Virus record (IMG/VR): IMGVR_UViG_3300037882_001770
Coordinates: 186,001 to 250,000 of that record
Strand: one strand, 5' to 3'
DNA length: 64,000 bases
The position numbers were made by a program, and so were the translations under genes. Every line of letters begins with the position of its first letter. Position 1 is the stretch's first letter. The notes under the pieces are model-generated. The model searched no databases. It had not been told where the DNA came from and worked only from the letters and a program-made list of their open reading frames with translations. Shown here piece by piece: positions 32,993-40,678 of the stretch.

Positions 32993-33200
32993 GTTTCTAT
33001 ATCATTGCACAATACCCTGGATTGATCAAACCAATCCTATGTATTATTGGGACACATTGTGTGCCAATGCTATAGAATTATTTGGACTTCCGGGAGATAG
33101 GTACATAACCGATATAAGCGAGCACTCAATGACCTGGAGTTTTTGCAACCAACATGACGCATTACTTTTTAAATTAAAATTTGGGGAAACATGTCAGTAA
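32952..33200 (+). CDS. small protein, F-x-F-xxx-D-A-xx-F-x-L-x-W family (start may be TTG 32979)
   Basis: W...CA.AIE.FGLPG.RY...WSFCNQHDALLFKLKF. Confidence 0.65.
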   Translation: MMITYGNTTLREPKFLYHCTIPWIDQTNPMYYWDTLCANAIELFGLPGDRYITDISEHSMTWSFCNQHDALLFKLKFGETCQ

Positions 33201-33823
33201 ACGACGAAATCATTCGTGTAACTCCAATACCAGAATATTTCAACATCACATGGATGCTAGGATCTAGATGCAACTACGATTGTATGTATTGTCCGGCCGA
33301 ATTGCACGATGCTACAAGTCGGCCACACGATTTAGAAACCATGCAAAAGGCGTGGATAAACATACACTCTAAAACAACTAATAAAAACTTGCCTTACAAA
33401 ATTAGTTTCACTGGCGGTGAAGTAACTGCCAATAAAAACTTTTTATCATTGGTTGGGTGGTTAAAATCCAACTACTCTGAAATTGGAATGATATTAACGA
33501 CCACTAACGGCAGCGCCAGTAAACGTTATTACGAACAGTTGAGTCAATCAATTGATTCGATCAGCTTTAGCACTCACAGTGAGTTTATGAACGAAGCAGA
33601 ATTTTTTGACAAGGTGTTGGCAACAGATCGGTTGATGCTACGTCCAGAAAAAAGTGTTCATGTTAACATCATGGACGAATATTGGAATCAGTCACGCATA
33701 CAAATATACAAAGAATTCTTAGAAAAACACAGTATCAGTTATAGCATAAACACAATCGATTACACTAGTAAAATTAGAGAAAACATTTTGAATAACGGAG
33801 TACAAAATCTTGTCGTCACTTGA
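33191..33823 (+). CDS. radical SAM protein (core domain only)
   Basis: CNYDCMYC, FTGGEVT, TNGS, SFSTHSE. Confidence 0.9.
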   Translation: MSVNDEIIRVTPIPEYFNITWMLGSRCNYDCMYCPAELHDATSRPHDLETMQKAWINIHSKTTNKNLPYKISFTGGEVTANKNFLSLVGWLKSNYSEIGMILTTTNGSASKRYYEQLSQSIDSISFSTHSEFMNEAEFFDKVLATDRLMLRPEKSVHVNIMDEYWNQSRIQIYKEFLEKHSISYSINTIDYTSKIRENILNNGVQNLVVT

Positions 33824-34766: not shown

Positions 34767-34826
34767 GTTGACCAACAATATTCTTTTTAGTATAATAGCA
34801 GTATAGTAATTAATTGTGAGATTCTG

Positions 34827-35873: not shown

Positions 35874-36095
35874 AGCTGAGTGATATCGGCTAGTGTGACC
35901 CGCACGATAAGTGAAATAATCAATCACGGGTGGTCCCAGTCTAACCTAACTGGCGCTGGCAATGCGTAACGGGCCCTGTAGTGAGCGGGTGAGGACTAGC
36001 TTGTTTCTCTGCTGAATCCGATGGGATAACCAGAGGCAACATAAACCGAATGTTGCAAAGTATAGGGTATAATTGACCGCCTGGGGCTGCAGAGC
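35874..36095 (+). ncRNA. candidate structured non-coding RNA, family unassigned
   Basis: GC-richer intergenic stretch with nested stems GCTAGT/ACTAGC, ACCCGC/GCGGGT, CCAGT/ACTGG, CTCTG/CAGAG, GCAACAT/ATGTTGC. Confidence 0.6.
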
Positions 36096-36112
36096 ATTGT
36101 GGTATGTAGAGG

Positions 36113-36141
36113 TTGACATTTCTTAAAGATTCCAGTATAAT
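36113..36141 (+). promoter_or_regulatory. consensus sigma70 promoter
   Basis: TTGACA-N17-TATAAT. Confidence 0.9.
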
Positions 36142-36227
36142 TGTCAAATGCTAGCCGATTTAAACTAAAGAAGTCGGCGGCTAGTTATTAACTGACAGTC
36201 TCAGGACTGCTATGAAAGGATGTAAAC

Positions 36228-37292
36228 ATGGTACAGCGTCTTACACGTAAACTTACCGATGTGGCCTCGGAAGTTGAAAAGCAAATCAAGGCCCACTACA
36301 ATATCACGCAAAAAATACTAGATAGTTTTCGTGAGCAAGCTCAAGCAAAACACACTCTAGGATATAACTTTCCTGAATCAAAAATGGTTGCCATTGATGA
36401 TCTCTGGATTGATTACGAAGTTCAACGAGATGTGCTACACAAACATATTATCAGTATTATGAAAAATTGGGATCCAAGAATTTGTAGCCCAGTTTCAGCT
36501 TGCAAACTAACAGACCGCGAGCGGTGCGATACATACGACGGCCAGCATCGAACCATCTCTGCGGCAATCCTAGGCTATACAGAAATCCCAGGTGCAGTAG
36601 TTCATACCAACGACCCAAACTTTGCCAGTCTAGCATTTGAACAACTCAACGACACAGGTGTCAAACGTTTGGGTCCAGGCGACTTGCATCGCAATGCCTT
36701 GGTGCGTTATAAAAATGGTAGTCACGAACTTCGCAATGTTCGTGCTCGCATCTTGCAAGATCAGTTTGATAACTTGCAAATTGACCTGCAAGACAAAGGT
36801 GCTAGGTCCAGCGATAACCTACGCGGCGATCACGACTACTTTTTTAGTCATTTTAAATATGCCTACAAGGCTATTGATATTGACGAATCCGGCAAGGTGT
36901 TGTGTGCTGTGTTGGATGCTATAAAAACAGTATTTCCTTTGCAGGAAGAAGTTGATCAAGGTGTGTTTATTGGCCTAGTTGAATTGCAACGATTAACCAA
37001 TACTAATCCACGTAATCAACTACCCACGGATTGGATGAAAACCTTGTTGGAATCTGTTAAATCTACTTTTAAAAGCAGTCATTTGATTCATGCCAAAGCA
37101 AAGATTCAATGGGAACACAGCCATCCAGGTGCAGGTTGGGTCGCTCCTACTGCTATGAGTAACTTCATGCGTGAGATTCATCTACGCAATGGTGGCAAAT
37201 TGAATCTTCCTTATCACGGTGAGGGTGCCAAGGTTGGTATTGTGGATGGTAATGTCGCTCCGGGACTATTTCCACAGGGAGCCGAACAATGA
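36228..37292 (+). CDS. ParB/Srx-like (DGQHR) domain protein
   Basis: L.IDYEVQRD, WDP....P, DGQHR..A..LG, A..F..LN...K.L. Confidence 0.8.
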   Translation: MVQRLTRKLTDVASEVEKQIKAHYNITQKILDSFREQAQAKHTLGYNFPESKMVAIDDLWIDYEVQRDVLHKHIISIMKNWDPRICSPVSACKLTDRERCDTYDGQHRTISAAILGYTEIPGAVVHTNDPNFASLAFEQLNDTGVKRLGPGDLHRNALVRYKNGSHELRNVRARILQDQFDNLQIDLQDKGARSSDNLRGDHDYFFSHFKYAYKAIDIDESGKVLCAVLDAIKTVFPLQEEVDQGVFIGLVELQRLTNTNPRNQLPTDWMKTLLESVKSTFKSSHLIHAKAKIQWEHSHPGAGWVAPTAMSNFMREIHLRNGGKLNLPYHGEGAKVGIVDGNVAPGLFPQGAEQ

Positions 37293-37771
37293 ATCCTACC
37301 ATCACAATCAACCTGGCAGATATTTGGGACTATACAGAAATTCCACACATCATGCGAAATCACATGATTGCTGAGTATGGCTATGCTTTTAGACGTGGTA
37401 ACATGATTCTCAAGTACGGATTAAGTGCCGACAACTCTAGAATTTACGGCGAACGTATCTATCGTCAATCCGGCAATTTACCAGGATGGAGAAAACTGCT
37501 GGGCGGCCCCAGTGGTAGCGACATGGCAGATATTGCTCGTGAGTTTGAACAAATATACGGTCTGGAGTTGAATAGAAAAGATGTGTCTATTGATGTTTAC
37601 CAGATGCCCAATGCCTCTGCTTGTGCTGAGTTCGAACGCAAACTGATCACCGATTATATATGGACTCACGAAGGATCAGCACCACTGGGTAACAAAGATT
37701 TTGAGACCTTGCTGGAAGAGCGCAAGTATCGTAATACCCGTATGTTGTCTACTATCATAGAGTTTATCTAA
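37289..37771 (+). CDS. GIY-YIG-like nuclease
   Basis: YGYAF....ILKYGLS......GERI.R; E..LI..Y....G..PLGNK. Confidence 0.6.
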   Translation: MNPTITINLADIWDYTEIPHIMRNHMIAEYGYAFRRGNMILKYGLSADNSRIYGERIYRQSGNLPGWRKLLGGPSGSDMADIAREFEQIYGLELNRKDVSIDVYQMPNASACAEFERKLITDYIWTHEGSAPLGNKDFETLLEERKYRNTRMLSTIIEFI

Positions 37772-37773
37772 CC

Positions 37774-38331
37774 ATGCTTAAAGAATCTCTAGATACGTTT
37801 GTTGCACCCAACTACGGTAAGACTCAGCGCAGTCCCGAAACTTATCAAGCGGTAGCTCAACATTGTCGCCAGCACTTGATTCACTTGGTTACCGAATATC
37901 ATCTTGTAAATAATAATCAACAATTATTACGAGAAATTCGTAACGATATGGATTATTACCTACGACGATATCACGAATACTGTATCCAACAACGTGATGG
38001 TATGAAAGCGCACTACTATGAAATTGGCGCCGACGATGACTGTGACTTTGAACACTTGATACCAGCAGCTCGAATTCGTGATCTGCTGTTATTTGGGATC
38101 ATCACTGTAGAGCAAGCTCTTAATGCTCCTACTGTAAGATTGAGTCGCGCTAAACACATGGCGCTCAAAGATGCTGGTTGGGCCAGTAAAACTCCCGACA
38201 TGTGGTTACCGTTCCGTCGATACACTCAGGTATTTGCCGCAAACTTTCAAACGCATGACGGGGTAGCAATAGATACAGAAACATGGACATTAGAAAAACA
38301 TTTTGATTATTTTAAACATTTGGTGTTATAA
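37774..38331 (+). CDS. hypothetical protein with EHxxP (HNH-like) motif
   Basis: DFEHLIPA...P.V.L....H..L...G....P....PF.RY. Confidence 0.55.
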   Translation: MLKESLDTFVAPNYGKTQRSPETYQAVAQHCRQHLIHLVTEYHLVNNNQQLLREIRNDMDYYLRRYHEYCIQQRDGMKAHYYEIGADDDCDFEHLIPAARIRDLLLFGIITVEQALNAPTVRLSRAKHMALKDAGWASKTPDMWLPFRRYTQVFAANFQTHDGVAIDTETWTLEKHFDYFKHLVL

Positions 38332-38777
38332 TGAGTGAAATTACTTTTAAACGATTTCCTGAAAGCAAGCAAGAACAGATCAGACAGTTTGTGGCCTATG
38401 CACAGATGTGTGGCTTGTCGGGCAAGGACATTCGCAGCATCGGTGACAAGCTGGATCGGCAACGCAAGGTCAGCGAGCGGCAGGCCAACATGGAAATCGT
38501 TAAAGGCTTTGAGTGTTTAAGCATTGGGGATGATGCCAAGAAATACGATAAAAAATATCAACTCAACCAACGTTTCAAACTCAAAACTGCTAACGGCGCT
38601 TACAACTTTGTTTACAACTGGGGTGGTTATACGGTCACCAGTTTAAAAACTAAAAAAACTGTAAGCCACAAGACTGACATCCATGCTTATGAACTTCCGG
38701 TTAGAAACTATGATGAAGTCGCTCGTTATGCAACCTTGTTGGATATTGCATTTGGTAAATTGAAACTGAATTTTTAA
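38331..38777 (+). CDS. hypothetical basic protein
   Basis: TAATG coupling at both ends. Confidence 0.7.
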   Translation: MSEITFKRFPESKQEQIRQFVAYAQMCGLSGKDIRSIGDKLDRQRKVSERQANMEIVKGFECLSIGDDAKKYDKKYQLNQRFKLKTANGAYNFVYNWGGYTVTSLKTKKTVSHKTDIHAYELPVRNYDEVARYATLLDIAFGKLKLNF

Positions 38778-39925
38778 TGATTGAACAATACTATCAACAG
38801 CTATGTCAGGAGTGGGGATATACGCCCACCGCCGATGTATGCACAGGTTACGAATCGGTTATGCCTAGATTGCGAGCACTTGGCAAAGAAGCATGGAACC
38901 GAGCCGACGAAGCGGGGAAGCAATCGATTCAGGATGAAGTATTTAATATCTATCGCAGTGTGGGCGTAGTTCCTATTACCTACTACAATCTGGACGGGTG
39001 TCGTGCTCAAGTCAATGAACTAGTAACCAAGACAAAGTCAGTTAAGAATCATCAGTTAGGAGTGGGCAACAACGAAGGCTTGGCATTTGGTCGGTTTTGG
39101 TTTCCTAACATGCAAGATGCCAAATGGAACGACAACGCCACAGTGAGTATTCGGGCTAGATTTAATCACGACAGCAAACTCAAACGAGCAATCAAGTTGG
39201 CCTATGTACATCGCGACGAAGGTGAGGACACAGTAATACCCAAAAATATTCGCCGTGCATTGGAGCTGGTCAATGGTGGGACCATACAAAACTTCAAACC
39301 TATGAATGCTCGTGCTGTTTGGGAACATATCTGCCCAGTATTTCGTGGCAACGTATTAGACTTTAGTTCGGGATATGGTGGTCGTATGTTTGGAGCAATG
39401 ACTAGTAATCTACGATATCATTACACAGGATTAGATCCAAATACCAGGACATTTCAAGGACTCAATGCACTGGGTGAATTACTTACAGATCAAAATTTAG
39501 GGGCAGGTTATTCTATGCACTGTATTCCCAGTGAGGAATTTGATCCAGACCCTGGCTTCTACGATGCGGCATTCTCTAGTCCACCTTATTTTAATTTAGA
39601 AACCTACACCGATGAACCAACACAATGTATGAATCGTTATACTACATTAGACGAATGGTTTGATGGATATGTAGTTGAAACTATACACATGACTCACAAG
39701 GCATTATGTCAGGGCGGTATGTATGCTGTAAACATTGCTGACTACAAGAACGGAAAGCAAGATTTTAAGATTGTAAACCACTGGATTGAACTAGCCGAAG
39801 CGACTGGATTCAGGCACGTCGAAACAATAGATATGATACTAAATGTTCGCCCAGGAGTTGGCAACAACAAGTTGGAAAAAGCCTACAAAAGCGAAGGCAT
39901 CTATATTTTCCAAAAAAAATCATAA
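38777..39925 (+). CDS. SAM-dependent DNA amino-methyltransferase (N4-C/N6-A)
   Basis: NFKP..A; motif I VLDFSSGYGGR; Y.G.DPN; motif IV FSSPPYFNLE.Y. Confidence 0.88.
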   Translation: MIEQYYQQLCQEWGYTPTADVCTGYESVMPRLRALGKEAWNRADEAGKQSIQDEVFNIYRSVGVVPITYYNLDGCRAQVNELVTKTKSVKNHQLGVGNNEGLAFGRFWFPNMQDAKWNDNATVSIRARFNHDSKLKRAIKLAYVHRDEGEDTVIPKNIRRALELVNGGTIQNFKPMNARAVWEHICPVFRGNVLDFSSGYGGRMFGAMTSNLRYHYTGLDPNTRTFQGLNALGELLTDQNLGAGYSMHCIPSEEFDPDPGFYDAAFSSPPYFNLETYTDEPTQCMNRYTTLDEWFDGYVVETIHMTHKALCQGGMYAVNIADYKNGKQDFKIVNHWIELAEATGFRHVETIDMILNVRPGVGNNKLEKAYKSEGIYIFQKKS

Positions 39926-39943: not shown

Positions 39944-39996
39944 ATAGGCACAATCTATTAAAAACTGTTGACAATAGTATTAAATAAACATATACT
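39944..39996 (+). promoter_or_regulatory. LysR/OxyR-like box plus sigma70 promoter
   Basis: ATAG-N7-CTAT 39944-39958; TTGACA 39968-N17-TATACT 39991. Confidence 0.6.
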
Positions 39997-40036: not shown

Positions 40037-40180
40037 ATGGAACAATATGTATGTGGAGTATGTGGCCACGTTCACAATGAGGCCGTCGAAGGTGTGTTTG
40101 CAGAACTTAGCGACAACTTTCTTTGCCCTGAGTGCGGGTGCTACAAAGATGAGTACGCAGTACAAGAACTAGCAGTATAA
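40037..40180 (+). CDS. rubredoxin (not in ORF track)
   Basis: MEQYVCGVCGHVHNE...F.EL.D.F.CPECG..K..Y, two CxxC motifs; AAGGA RBS. Confidence 0.9.
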   Translation: MEQYVCGVCGHVHNEAVEGVFAELSDNFLCPECGCYKDEYAVQELAV

Positions 40181-40237
40181 GGTCGACACAGTGAGTAAAT
40201 CACTGTATAATTGTTTTTTTATAAAGGAGAAGTAAAG

Positions 40238-40678
40238 ATGGCAAAATCAGTAAAAGGTACCAAAACAGAACACGCATTGAAAGATGCGTTTGCAGGTGAA
40301 AGCAAAGCCAACCGCCGTTATTTGTATTTCGCAAACATGGCTGACGTAGCAGGCGCACCAGATGTTGCGGCAGTATTCCGTTCCACCGCTGAAGGCGAAA
40401 CAGGTCATGCACACGGCCATATGGAGTACTTGATCACAGGTGGTGCAGGCGATCCTGAAACAGGTCTTCCAGCTGGTTCAGTCAAAGAAGCTTTAGAAAG
40501 TGCTATCGCAGGCGAGACACACGAGTACACCGACATGTACCCAGGCATGGCTAAGACAGCCCGCGACGAAGGCTTTGACGAAATCGCTGACTGGTTTGAG
40601 ACTTTGGCTAAGGCTGAGCGTAGCCACGCAAACAAGTTCACCAAGACTTTGGCGGCTCACTTAGAAGACATCAAGTAA
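40238..40678 (+). CDS. rbr: rubrerythrin (di-iron domain only)
   Basis: [38 protein letters not shown]. Confidence 0.93.

What the first reader, a model, noticed from the sequence alone, without database searches (positions are those of the whole stretch)
36113..39925. ParB/DGQHR + GIY-YIG-like + EHxxP + DNA methyltransferase operon
Seen: a perfect sigma70 promoter with an inverted TGTCAA right after the -10, a leader hairpin (GCCGATTT/AAGTCGGC within CTAGCC/GGCTAG), then five tightly coupled genes: ParB/Srx-DGQHR protein, GIY-YIG-like protein, EHLIP protein, a basic unknown and an SPPY amino-methyltransferase. Known: ParB/Srx-DGQHR domains paired with HNH-type domains occur in GmrSD/SspE/DndB-type modification-sensing systems. 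Inference: a phage-borne restriction/modification-like or competitor-exclusion system with a new composition, possibly linked to the upstream RNA. The nuclease calls rest on short motifs.
Basis: partly seen in the sequence, partly recalled or inferred. Interest (0 to 1): 0.8.

Follow-up and report, generated by a model that had tools for sequence, protein, structure and literature searches.

The report
Jumbo-phage ParB-like/HNH-like gene pair
The five-gene "operon" is really a conserved early-expressed pair (a ParB/Srx-fold NTPase-like protein and a small HNH-like partner) of uncultured freshwater jumbo phages. A selfish homing-endonuclease gene sits between the two, a variable gene follows them, and a DNA methyltransferase is only loosely linked.

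Summary
There is a 12/12 sigma-70 promoter, two leader hairpins and five tightly packed ORFs (g1–g5, 36228–39925). The window is part of a 317-kb IMG/VR jumbo phage.

The five genes are not one evolutionary unit. g1 and g3 were adjacent in all 85 loci fetched by g1 similarity, and still adjacent at 27% g1 identity.
- **g1:** ParB/Srx fold, with QR, DGQHR and FxxxN motifs. Its nearest named family is DUF6551.
- **g3:** invariant EHxIP, with only weak HNH signals. No Foldseek match.
- **g1|g3 slot:** empty in 21 loci. Elsewhere it holds unrelated nucleases: the g2 type (GIY-YIG-like), HNH_3, HNH+NUMOD3, T5orf172-like and MvaI/BcnI-like. This is a homing-endonuclease hotspot.
- **g4:** sporadic and of unknown function.
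- **g5:** an N6_N4-type (SPPY) DNA methyltransferase. It follows g3 in 12 of 57 g1-anchored loci. It more often occurs without the pair, but recurs next to g1-like or g3-like genes in diverged lineages.

Best reading (confidence 0.42): g1–g3 is an NTP-gated DNA-nicking or -cleaving pair that works like split GmrS/GmrD. Membership of that family failed Pfam and BrxU profile tests. No PADLOC system matches. I rate it a new variant of a known kind, of moderate interest.

The parts
36113..36141 (+). Sigma-70-type promoter, TTGACA-17-TATAAT, driving g1-g5
   Evidence: 12/12 consensus match. A TTGACA-N16-18-TAnnnT promoter is found at -75 to -130 in most of 71 distinct relatives.
36151..36184 (+). 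Leader hairpin 1: inner stem GCCGATTT/AAGTCGGC, outer CTAGCC/GGCTAG
   Evidence: In the minimum-free-energy fold. The inner stem is kept by a compensatory G-C to A-T change in L007 and L008; the outer stem is not conserved.
36196..36209 (+). Leader hairpin 2 (CAGTC-TCAG-GACTG), just 5' of the RBS. Candidate translational operator or mRNA-stability element.
   Evidence: It is positionally equivalent to a hairpin with a YAUNGUR apex in 44/72 distinct leaders. Of 52 motif occurrences, 46 have 4/4 flanking pairs against a 7.4% background, with 20 distinct four-base stem pairs.
36214..36220 (+). Shine-Dalgarno-like GAAAGGA
   Evidence: Read from sequence. AAGGA/AGGAG is conserved in relatives.
36228..37292 (+). 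g1, 354 aa: ParB/Srx-fold protein of the DGQHR type (QR 66-67, DGQHR 104-108, F137xxxN141) with a helical C-terminal domain. Predicted NTP-binding and DNA-associated subunit.
   Evidence: More than 1000 homologue clusters at 65-91% identity. AF2 pLDDT 86. All top Foldseek PDB hits are ParB, Noc, KorB, PadC, Srx or SerK. Of 50 remote relatives, 35 carry DUF6551.
37289..37771 (+). g2, 160 aa: GIY-YIG-like nuclease, interpreted as a free-standing homing endonuclease inserted between g1 and g3
   Evidence: Invariant Y30, Y32, K42, G44, R56/R59, E116, N135. In the Atlas search, 24 of the top 100 clusters carry PF01541, and TM is 0.49/0.57 to GIY-YIG models. No Pfam hit. The slot is polymorphic.
37774..38331 (+). 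g3, 185 aa: obligate partner of g1. Coiled-coil N-terminus plus an EHxIP-centred beta-beta-alpha-like core. Candidate divergent His-Me finger (HNH_4-like) nuclease or nickase.
   Evidence: Adjacent to g1 in 85/85 loci and in distant clades. AF2 pLDDT 91. Y81, E93, H94, I96, P97, P119, PF146-147, RY149-150, H176 and F180 are invariant, including in the distant homologues. HNH_4 is sub-threshold in 8/30 members. Atlas leads all fall in His-Me families. No Foldseek match.
38331..38777 (+). g4, 148 aa: basic protein of unknown function, a sporadic accessory gene
   Evidence: Homologues follow g3 in only L026, L028 and L038, and occur elsewhere in L118/L119. No meaningful family hits.
38777..39925 (+). 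g5, 382 aa: SAM-dependent DNA amino-methyltransferase. Motif I is LDFSSGYGG (194-202) and motif IV is SSPPYF (267-272). Probably N4-cytosine or N6-adenine.
   Evidence: Atlas score 0.99 to phage clusters carrying PF01555 N6_N4_Mtase and named N4-cytosine methyltransferases. phrog_12517, phrog_498 and PADLOC MTase_II are weak hits. Motifs are invariant. More than 1500 homologue clusters.

Best explanation
Host RNA polymerase reads a strong sigma-70 early promoter into a structured leader and five ORFs.

Shown:
- The functional and evolutionary core is the translationally coupled pair g1-g3.
- g1 has a ParB/Srx fold with the DGQHR-domain motifs. These correspond to the nucleotide-binding site of this fold.

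Inferred:
- g1 binds an NTP and DNA.
- g3 carries an invariant E-H-x-I-P on a beta-strand, followed by a beta-strand and helix with H/D at position 128. It most likely supplies a divergent His-Me-finger (HNH_4-like) active site.
- The two proteins form a complex that nicks or cleaves DNA in an NTP-gated way. This is the same division of labour as split GmrS/GmrD, but they are not members of that family.
- The target is host DNA, or the DNA of competing phages, early in infection.
- g5, when present, is a DNA N4C/N6A methyltransferase. It marks phage DNA for self-protection or anti-restriction, and is linked to g1-like and g3-like genes only loosely.
- g2 is a promoter-less free-standing GIY-YIG-type homing endonuclease cassette. 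It has invaded the g1|g3 junction and rides on the operon's transcript.
- g4 is a variable accessory gene of unknown role.
- The conserved pre-RBS hairpin probably controls translation or mRNA stability of g1.
For: - **Anatomy:**
- **g1-g3 co-inheritance:** adjacent in 85/85 g1-anchored loci. Overlapping pairs persist at 27% g1 identity, with hhalign probability 97-98% for the g3 partner. A cryptic pair occurs in L104.
- **g1 fold and motifs:**. The three DGQHR-domain motifs are as defined in PMC4619093.
- **g1 relatives:** remote relatives are DUF6551, weak GmrSD_N and weak DndB. Phage DUF6551 ParB-fold proteins bind CTP or ATP (bioRxiv 10.1101/2025.10.10.680097). The same paper reports ParB-fold fusions to HNH, N6_N4 methyltransferase and acetyltransferase domains.
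- **g3:** invariant EHxIP and other polar invariants. HNH_4 is the commonest sub-threshold family, in 8/30 members. Atlas leads are GH-E, GmrSD_C, HNH/HNH_4, ICEA and HNH_2. The model's secondary structure is strand 90-94, strand 120-124, helix 125-133.
- **g2 slot polymorphism:** the slot is empty or holds unrelated nuclease families, including HNH_3 above the Pfam cut-off, HNH+NUMOD3 and MvaI/BcnI. This matches T4 seg/mob biology (PMC2988022).
- **g5:**. Its recurrent but non-obligate linkage is shown.
- **Lineage pattern:** lineages whose g1-like gene lost the motif Arg (EGQQS) also lack g3.
- **Expression:** fragments 95% identical to g1 and about 86% identical to g5 are present in a lake metatranscriptome. 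This is weak, because DNA carry-over is not excluded.
Against: - No nuclease fold is demonstrated for g3. Foldseek against PDB and BFVD gives nothing below E = 1. The profile versus PDB sequences and versus BrxU gives nothing.
- GmrD motifs 2 and 3 are absent. N117 and H128 are not invariant in distant homologues.
- g1 has no direct Pfam, NCBIfam, PHROG or PADLOC hit. Its Foldseek E-values are modest (2.5e-3 and weaker), with low TM-scores.
- ParB/Srx proteins are often not nuclease partners. They can be CTP clamps, regulators or kinases.
- Most g1-g3 loci have no adjacent methyltransferase. A self-protecting R-M logic is therefore not general.
- All loci come from related phages. Part of the adjacency could be inherited synteny.
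- No activity data exist.
Confidence: 0.42

Rival explanations
1. g1, with g3 as adaptor, is not a nuclease system. It is an NTP-dependent DNA-loading or regulatory ParB-like factor. Either it acts as a clamp that recruits or activates DNA-modifying enzymes encoded next door (the g5 methyltransferase, or the P-loop+GNAT protein found in other loci). Or it is a DndB/KorB-like early transcriptional regulator that may autoregulate through the leader.
For: - Top structural matches are CTP-clamp and regulator ParBs (Noc, ParB, KorB).
- ParB-fold fusions to N6_N4 methyltransferases and acetyltransferases are common in phages. One such fusion cluster is structurally similar to g5's family.
- Either g5 or a P-loop+GNAT gene follows g3 in 21 of 57 loci.
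- g1-like genes flank g5 on either side in diverged lineages.
- The g3 nuclease fold is unproven.
- DUF6551 genes of temperate phages sit right after cro in early operons.
Against: - Most g1-g3 loci have no adjacent modifying enzyme.
- The g5-linked g1-like proteins have lost the phosphate-binding Arg and lack g3. The active form therefore does not track the methyltransferase.
- g3's invariant E-H, R-Y and H residues look catalytic rather than adaptor-like.
- No HTH or other DNA-binding Pfam domain is detected in g1.
Confidence: 0.25
2. One reading: all five genes act together as one restriction/modification-like or competitor-exclusion system. It would have two nucleases (GIY-YIG and HNH-like), a ParB sensor, an unknown basic protein and a protecting methyltransferase.
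For: Tight packing and a single promoter in this genome. All three enzyme classes act on DNA. No known system matches.
Against: - g2 homologues were detected by tblastn (E<=1e-5) in only 17 of the 85 loci. The slot is empty in 21 and holds unrelated nucleases in the rest.
- g4 follows g3 in only 4 loci, including the window's own contig, and g5 in 12 of 57.
- Of 63 g5 loci with enough upstream flank, only 9 have both g1 and g3 upstream.
Confidence: 0.06
3. The g1|g3 slot genes are interchangeable effector nucleases of a g1-g3 sensor system (effector swapping, as in many defence systems), rather than selfish homing endonucleases.
For: Every identifiable slot gene is a nuclease, and the families are diverse. 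The slot genes are always co-oriented and embedded in the operon.
Against: The slot is empty in 21/85 loci while g1 and g3 stay conserved. NUMOD3, HNH_3 and T5orf172 are typical homing-endonuclease modules. The same HNH and GIY-YIG-like cassettes also appear at other junctions nearby, for example between g3 and g5 in L104, L101 and L116. This matches T4 seg/mob behaviour.
Confidence: 0.07
4. There is no shared function. g1, g3 and g5 are simply neighbouring early genes kept together by inherited synteny in one phage clade.
For: All loci come from related jumbo phages. Flanking genes (metallophosphoesterase, GT4) are also syntenic in several loci.
Against: g1-g3 adjacency with overlapping stop and start survives to 27% identity. 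Over the same distances everything around the pair is reshuffled, and foreign genes repeatedly insert between or after them without separating them. g5 keeps company with g1-like genes on either side.
Confidence: 0.1

Closest known systems
Split GmrS/GmrD (GmrSD type IV restriction enzyme of the E. coli CT596 prophage; fused forms Eco94GmrSD, BrxU, SspE)
   Same: - Two adjacent co-evolving genes.
- The first has a ParB/Srx fold with QR, DGQ(H/Q)R and FxxxN motifs.
- The second is small and carries (E/D)H(I/L/V)xP, followed about 23-35 residues later by a strand and helix bearing a potential metal ligand.
   Different: - No hit to GmrSD_N or GmrSD_C.
- hhalign to BrxU gives probability below 1% for both proteins.
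- GmrD motifs L(G/A)NLxLLxxxN and NxxFxxKK are absent.
- The pair is carried as a conserved early gene pair of lytic-type jumbo phages rather than in bacterial defence islands.
- The substrate is unknown.
DUF6551 (PF20188) ParB-like proteins of temperate phages, e.g. Staphylococcus phage EW ORF017 and mycobacteriophage Spikelee gp54
   Same: - The N-terminal roughly 110 residues are homologous. The g1 profile hits them at E of about 1e-7 to 1e-5 in 1.8 billion proteins, and 35/50 such hits carry DUF6551.
- They share the same YQR...DGQHR...FxxxN pattern.
- They are first genes of an early operon.
- Family members bind CTP or ATP.
   Different: g1 itself does not reach any Pfam threshold. It is about 80 aa longer, with a different C-terminal domain. 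The partner in temperate phages is a second ParB-like protein, not a g3 homologue.
DndB / DpdB DGQHR-domain proteins of DNA phosphorothioation and 7-deazaguanine systems
   Same: The DGQHR motif, a size of about 350-390 aa, and a helical C-terminal half.
   Different: No PF14072 or TIGR DGQHR hit. No dnd, dpd or queuosine-pathway genes were seen among the proteins scanned in the window or in the loci examined.
ParB_N-N6_N4 DNA methyltransferase fusions of phages
   Same: An association of a ParB-fold domain with the same methyltransferase superfamily as g5.
   Different: Here they are separate genes. The ParB part is of the DGQHR/DUF6551 type, not PF02195. Linkage is non-obligate.
T4 seg (GIY-YIG) and mob (HNH) free-standing homing endonucleases
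   Same: Promoter-less nuclease cassettes lying between genes conserved among related phages, with presence/absence polymorphism and several families at one junction.
   Different: The g2 family has no Pfam GIY-YIG hit and no recognisable DNA-binding extension (160 aa). Cleavage and homing are untested.

Membership tests
GmrSD (GmrS part) for g1 | Match to Pfam GmrSD_N/DUF262 (PF03235) | tested here: not met
   No Pfam family at E<=1 for g1. Only 3/50 remote relatives hit GmrSD_N weakly.
GmrSD (GmrS part) for g1 | QR pair, (I/V)DGQ(Q/H)R and FxxxN motifs (PMC4619093) | tested here: met
   Q66-R67, D104-(G/A)105-Q106-H107-R108 and F137...N141. All are invariant in 22 homologues except position 105, where G is replaced by A in 4.
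GmrSD (GmrS part) for g1 | ParB/Srx fold | tested here: met
   AF2 pLDDT 86. Foldseek PDB ranks 1-47 are all ParB, Noc, KorB, PadC, SerK or Srx, with probability up to 1.0 and E from 2.5e-3.
GmrSD for g1 and g3 | Detectable profile similarity to a characterised member (BrxU of pEFER) | tested here: not met
   hhalign probability is 0.35% for g1 (only the DGQHR/DGQQR stretch aligns) and 0.26% for g3.
GmrSD (GmrD part) / DUF1524 for g3 | Match to Pfam GmrSD_C/DUF1524 (PF07510) | tested here: not met
   No hit in g3 or in any of 30 homologues at E<=10. There is only an Atlas lead at score 0.72.
GmrSD (GmrD part) / DUF1524 for g3 | Motif 1, (I/L/V)(E/D)H(I/L/V)xPQ | tested here: met
   F-E93-H94-L-I96-P97-A. 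E, H, I and P are invariant, including in homologues whose g1 partner is only 27% identical.
GmrSD (GmrD part) / DUF1524 for g3 | Motifs 2 and 3: L(G/A)NLxLLxxxN and NxxFxxKK | tested here: not met
   g3 has LNAPTVRLSRAKH with different spacing. N117 and H128 are replaced in distant homologues (H128 by D). No NxxFxxKK is present.
GmrSD | NTP-stimulated cleavage of modified (glc-hmC) DNA | not testable with these tools
   Needs biochemistry.
His-Me finger / HNH nucleases for g3 | Beta-beta-alpha-metal fold recognisable by structure comparison | tested here: inconclusive
   The model is confident (pLDDT 91) and has strand 90-94, strand 120-124 and helix 125-133. Whole-chain Foldseek finds no His-Me structure in PDB or BFVD. 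The small motif may be masked by the long N-terminal helices.
His-Me finger / HNH nucleases for g3 | Sequence match to an HNH family model | tested here: inconclusive
   HNH_4 is the most frequent sub-threshold family (8/30 members, best E 0.0085, below the Pfam cut-off). There is no similarity to the classical HNH_3 genes of the same loci.
DGQHR domain / DndB for g1 | Match to PF14072 or the NCBIfam DGQHR/DndB models | tested here: not met
   No hits. Only 1 of 50 remote relatives hits DndB weakly.
DUF6551 (PF20188) for g1 | Pfam match above the gathering score | tested here: not met
   g1 has no Pfam hit. Homology of the N-domain is inferred transitively: the g1 profile hits proteins of which 35/50 carry DUF6551.
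Sulfiredoxin for g1 | Catalytic Cys in the F(G/S)GCHR signature | tested here: not met
   The equivalent position is Q106 in YDGQHR.
GIY-YIG nucleases for g2 | Match to PF01541 or related models | tested here: not met
   No GIY-YIG hit in g2 or in 10 homologues at E<=10. No PDB sequence hit.
GIY-YIG nucleases for g2 | GIY...YIG...R...E...N residue pattern and fold | tested here: inconclusive
   Invariant Y30-x-Y32, K42-(Y/H)-G44, R56/R59, E116 and N135. Atlas: 24 of the top 100 clusters carry PF01541, plus GIY_YIG_2 and Eco29kI. TM is 0.49-0.58 between a relative's model and GIY-YIG models. No model of g2 itself was made.
Free-standing homing endonuclease for g2 | Presence/absence polymorphism of a nuclease gene between genes conserved among related phages | tested here: met
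   The slot is empty in 21/85 loci. Elsewhere it holds at least 6 unrelated ORF families, including HNH_3, HNH+NUMOD3, MUG113/T5orf172 and MvaI/BcnI.
Free-standing homing endonuclease for g2 | Site-specific cleavage of the insert-free allele and super-Mendelian inheritance | not testable with these tools
   Needs enzyme assays and phage crosses.
N6_N4 DNA amino-methyltransferases for g5 | SAM-binding motif I and catalytic (D/N/S)PP(Y/F) motif IV | tested here: met
   LDFSSGYGG (194-202) and SSPPYF (267-272). All positions are invariant in 14 homologues except L194 and F196, which are conserved in at least 90%.
N6_N4 DNA amino-methyltransferases for g5 | Match to PF01555 or equivalent | tested here: inconclusive
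   No Pfam hit at E<=1. Weak hits to PADLOC MTase_II (2.4e-4) and phrog_498 (2.8e-3), and phrog_12517 at 2.7e-12. Atlas score is 0.99, with 230-237 of 256 shared features, to phage clusters where 21-59% of members carry PF01555.
Known anti-phage defence systems (PADLOC) | Any component model matched | tested here: not met
   There are only weak single hits: MTase_II and mad2 for g5, an MTase_II model for g3 and a Cas5 model for g4.

The most novel reading that the evidence does not exclude
g1-g3 is a previously unrecognised two-subunit DNA-targeting enzyme that is core to a large clade of uncultured freshwater jumbo phages (about 320-375 kb). It would combine a DUF6551-like ParB/Srx NTPase with a new, structurally unmatched family of His-Me-finger-like nucleases. 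The virus, rather than the host, would use it as an early type-IV-like or host-takeover nuclease. A family-specific 5'-UTR hairpin operator would control it.
Probability: 0.3. Interest if true: 0.65.

Novelty: new variant of a known kind. Interest (0 to 1): 0.5.

Why it matters
ParB/Srx-fold NTPases are emerging as general nucleotide-gated switches far beyond chromosome segregation. Phage versions such as DUF6551 bind CTP or ATP but have no known function.

This case offers a very abundant and very conserved phage pair, with more than 1000 protein clusters at 90% identity. The ParB-like protein is locked to a small partner with catalytic-looking residues and no structural relative. If the pair is an NTP-gated nuclease, it would show that viruses deploy the GmrS/GmrD logic themselves, for host takeover or inter-phage warfare. 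It would also give a function to an orphan family.

The locus is also a clean natural example of a homing-endonuclease hotspot in uncultured jumbo phages. It is a caution against reading tight operon packing as functional coupling.

Tried and rejected
- **Family scans of g1-g4:** Pfam, NCBIfam, PHROG and PADLOC gave nothing usable.
- **PDB sequence searches with profiles of g1, g2, g3 and g5:** only spurious or marginal hits.
- **GenBank phages:** megablast and tblastn found no relatives of the region, g1 or g3.
- **g3 structure searches:** Foldseek against PDB and BFVD found nothing. hhalign of g3 against the HNH_3 genes of the same loci found nothing.
- **GmrSD membership:** rejected after hhalign to BrxU.
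- **Sulfiredoxin idea:** prompted by neighbouring peroxiredoxin, rubrerythrin and SOD genes. Rejected because the catalytic Cys position is Gln.
- **7-deazaguanine (DpdB-like) idea:** prompted by a small radical-SAM gene at 33191-33823. Rejected because that gene is not QueE by NCBIfam cut-offs, and no Dpd or Que genes were found.
- **Pre-RBS hairpin motif as a genome-wide repeat:** GCATNGTGC is not enriched in the window, with 6 matches against 3.2 expected, and there are no convincing copies elsewhere.
- **Rfam:** no family matches the leader or the upstream element.
- **Context of DUF6551 metagenomic relatives:** the contigs were too short to be informative.
- **RNA evidence:** only short contigs of relatives in one lake metatranscriptome. 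No transcript ends or operon structure could be read.

Full report
**What is there**

The window belongs to IMG/VR contig IMGVR_UViG_3300037882_001770, which is 317,493 bp (100% match). A baseplate-like protein in the window resembles those of PA5oct-, Atu_ph07- and Phosso-like jumbo myoviruses. Other genes include ClpP, UvdE, SOD, ferritin, rubredoxin/rubrerythrin and clamp-loader/Pol III-like genes. Relatives come from freshwater-lake metagenomes on contigs of 320-375 kb.

At the flagged coordinates:
- TTGACA (36113-36118), 17 nt, TATAAT (36136-36141) is the only perfect 12/12 promoter match in 33-42 kb.
- It is followed by TGTCAA (36142-36147).
- A hairpin follows, GCCGATTT (36154-36161) / AAGTCGGC (36171-36178).
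- A second hairpin, CAGTC-TCAG-GACTG (36196-36209), comes next, then a GAAAGGA RBS.
- Five ORFs follow: g1 36228-37292 (354 aa), g2 37289-37771 (160 aa), g3 37774-38331 (185 aa), g4 38331-38777 (148 aa) and g5 38777-39925 (382 aa). Their junctions overlap or are nearly abutting.

The next near-consensus promoter is at 39968, so a single five-gene transcription unit is plausible in this genome.

**Which parts are conserved**

g1 has more than 1000 homologue clusters at 65-91% identity. I fetched 85 loci around g1 homologues and mapped all five proteins onto them.
- g3 is adjacent in every locus, at 56-93% identity.
- The space between g1 and g3 is polymorphic. It is absent (0-50 bp) in 21 loci and 350-1150 bp in the others.
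- The slot ORFs fall into unrelated groups:
  - the g2 family;
  - a classical HNH family (HNH_3, 28 bits, above the Pfam cut-off);
  - a second HNH-like family;
  - a 330-aa HNH+NUMOD3 protein;
  - a MUG113/T5orf172 (GIY-YIG superfamily) family;
  - an MvaI/BcnI-like restriction-endonuclease relative;
  - three families with no hit.
- Downstream of g3 is also variable. g5 follows in 12 of 57 loci with enough flank, usually after one variable small gene. A 351-aa P-loop+GNAT protein follows in 9. Neither follows in the rest.
- g4 homologues follow g3 in only three other loci.

Full-length g1 relatives at only about 27% identity are still followed by an overlapping 186-210-aa gene. Where DNA was available, that gene is a g3 homologue (hhalign probability 97-98%). 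So the unit of inheritance is g1-g3.

**What the proteins are: g1**

- The AlphaFold model is confident (pLDDT 86).
- Foldseek PDB ranks 1-47 are all ParB/Srx-fold proteins: Noc, ParB, KorB, PadC, serine kinase and sulfiredoxin. E-values are modest (from 2.5e-3) but the hits are unanimous.
- g1 carries all three motifs that define DGQHR/GmrS-type domains: QR (66-67), DGQHR (104-108) and FxxxN (137-141). They are essentially invariant; only G105 varies, to Ala in 4 of 22 homologues. Motif definitions come from PMC4619093.
- An exhaustive profile search of 1.8 billion representatives finds only about 17 full-length clusters. Beyond those it finds proteins matching just the N-terminal domain. Of 50 of these, 35 carry DUF6551, 7 ParB_N, 3 GmrSD_N and 1 DndB.
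- g1 itself hits no Pfam, NCBIfam, PHROG or PADLOC model.
- Phage DUF6551 ParB-fold proteins bind CTP or ATP in vitro. ParB-fold fusions to HNH, N6_N4 methyltransferase and acetyltransferase domains exist (bioRxiv 10.1101/2025.10.10.680097).
- In temperate phages, DUF6551 genes lie right after cro in the early operon.

**What the proteins are: g3**

- The model is confident (pLDDT 91). It has two long N-terminal helices, then strand 81-83, strand 90-94 (ending in E93-H94), helices, strand 120-124 and helix 125-133.
- Across close and distant homologues the invariant residues are Y81, E93, H94, I96, P97, P119, P146-F147, R149-Y150, H176 and F180. Position 128 is H or D.
- EHxIP is motif 1 of GmrD/DUF1524.
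- From my own knowledge, as a lead only: D-x-E-H-L-I-P ... V-x-L-S-R-x-K-H parallels the Cas9-type HNH_4 pattern.
- Supporting but weak evidence: HNH_4 is the commonest sub-threshold Pfam family (8/30 members, best E 0.0085). The nearest Pfam-bearing Atlas clusters are all His-Me-finger families.
- Against: Foldseek finds nothing in PDB or BFVD. Profile searches of PDB sequences find nothing. GmrD motifs 2 and 3 are absent.

I therefore treat "HNH-like nuclease" as the most likely reading, but not an established one.

**What the proteins are: g2, g4 and g5**

- **g2:** the family conserves a GIY-YIG-like pattern (Y30, Y32, K42, G44, R56/R59, E116, N135). Atlas features point to GIY-YIG, GIY_YIG_2 and Eco29kI clusters. 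No HMM hit exists.
- **g4:** remains unknown.
- **g5:** has invariant LDFSSGYGG and SSPPYF motifs. It matches phage N6_N4_Mtase clusters, many named N4-cytosine methyltransferases, at Atlas score 0.99.

**Is the methyltransferase linked?**

I anchored a second search on g5 and fetched 80 loci.
- By tblastn, only 9 of 63 loci with enough upstream flank have both g1 and g3 upstream.
- With HMMs, 11 loci have both g1 and g3. Nine have a g3-like gene without a detectable g1. In L104, the gene in the g1 position is a cryptic g1-like protein with QR, DAQHT and FxxxN.
- About 23 have a diverged g1-like protein immediately upstream or downstream of g5. In the one examined in detail, L109, DGQHR has decayed to EGQQS, and none of these loci has a g3.
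- About 37 have none of these.

So g5 is often independent. Its repeated company with g1-like or g3-like genes, in both orders, suggests a real but non-obligate functional relationship.

**Interpretation**

The g1|g3 slot behaves like the intergenic sites of T4 that hold seg (GIY-YIG) and mob (HNH) genes. Those are promoter-less cassettes between genes conserved among related phages (PMC2988022). Similar HNH and GIY-YIG-like cassettes also sit at neighbouring junctions in g5-anchored loci. g2 is therefore best read as a selfish homing endonuclease, not a component.

The core pair has the division of labour of split GmrS/GmrD: a ParB/Srx NTPase plus an EHxxP protein. It fails every membership test based on similarity:
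- no GmrSD_N or GmrSD_C hit;
- hhalign to BrxU below 1% probability.

My best mechanistic guess is an NTP-gated nicking or cleaving complex made early in infection. The main rival is a non-nucleolytic ParB-like loader or regulator serving neighbouring DNA-modifying enzymes.

**Leader**

The promoter is near-universal in relatives. In 44 of 72 distinct leaders, a hairpin with a YAUNGUR apex ends 16-29 nt before the ATG. Of 52 occurrences of the apex motif, 46 have four of four flanking base pairs, against 7.4% for the same motif elsewhere in the loci (binomial p about 1e-45). There are 20 distinct four-base stem pairs.

The window's sub-clade has a different hairpin (UCAG loop) at the same place. 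It also has an upstream hairpin kept by a compensatory change. This argues for a cis-regulatory RNA (or DNA) element controlling g1. The inverted TGTCAA is not conserved.

**Expression**

One lake metatranscriptome holds short contigs 95% identical to part of g1 and about 86% identical to part of g5. This is compatible with expression but proves nothing about operon structure.

**Verdict**

The sequence features are real and the fold calls are partly right. The five-gene system is not supported. What remains is a widespread, conserved and uncharacterised two-gene module with a GmrS/GmrD-like logic, plus a loosely associated methyltransferase. It is a new variant of a known kind, of moderate interest.

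Noticed in passing
window 35880-36105 (+): A conserved structured element of about 230 nt lies immediately upstream of the g1 promoter. With only four relatives (window, L004, L007, L008), RNAalifold gives 57 pairs, 20 of them with double-sided compensatory changes. It has no Rfam match. A freshwater DNA run has more contigs on 35944-36087 than on the flanks. It is absent from most other g1 loci. It is a candidate novel ncRNA or 3'-UTR structure of the upstream gene.
   Followed up: partly
L001:10145-11200 and the same position in 8 other loci: A 351-aa protein with an N-terminal P-loop and a C-terminal GNAT acetyltransferase domain directly follows g3 where g5 is absent. This parallels known ParB-fold/acetyltransferase fusions.
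   Followed up: partly
L109:4469-5659, L134:6390-7508, L146:7193-8329 and about 20 further g5 loci: A diverged paralogous branch of g1-like proteins (370-470 aa) lies next to g5-type methyltransferases on either side, without g3. In the one examined, L109, the QR motif is retained but DGQHR has decayed to EGQQS.
   Followed up: partly
L104:3790-7146: A 400-aa protein not detectably related to g1 by standard thresholds still aligns in register (QR, DAQHT, FxxxN). It is followed by a g3-like gene, an HNH cassette and g5. The g1-g3 pairing may therefore extend further than HMMs show.
   Followed up: partly
L087:5960-6488: In one metagenomic relative the g3 position is called as two short ORFs (106 and 88 aa). 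This is either a frameshifted or pseudogenised g3, or an assembly error.
   Followed up: no
window 34768-34796, 39968-39996, 40183-40211: Further 11/12 sigma-70 consensus promoters stand in front of small genes, including rubredoxin (40037-40180) and rubrerythrin (40211-40678). The region looks like a mosaic of separately promoted early cassettes.
   Followed up: no
window, whole: There is a rich set of host-like auxiliary genes: two ClpP, UvdE, Fe/Mn SOD, ferritin-like, fatty-acid desaturase, UDP-glucose dehydrogenase, GGACT, radical-SAM/SPASM enzymes, an LpxH-like metallophosphoesterase and a GT4 glycosyltransferase. A close relative carries AhpC and AhpD-like genes right after g5.
   Followed up: no
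L173 (Staphylococcus phage EW 30426-32100) and L174 (Mycobacterium phage Spikelee 36059-37842): In temperate phages the DUF6551 ParB-like gene is the second of two overlapping genes placed directly after cro. In phage EW the first gene is annotated as a ParB-like partition nuclease. In Spikelee it is annotated only as a hypothetical protein. This early pair is conserved and has no known function.
   Followed up: no
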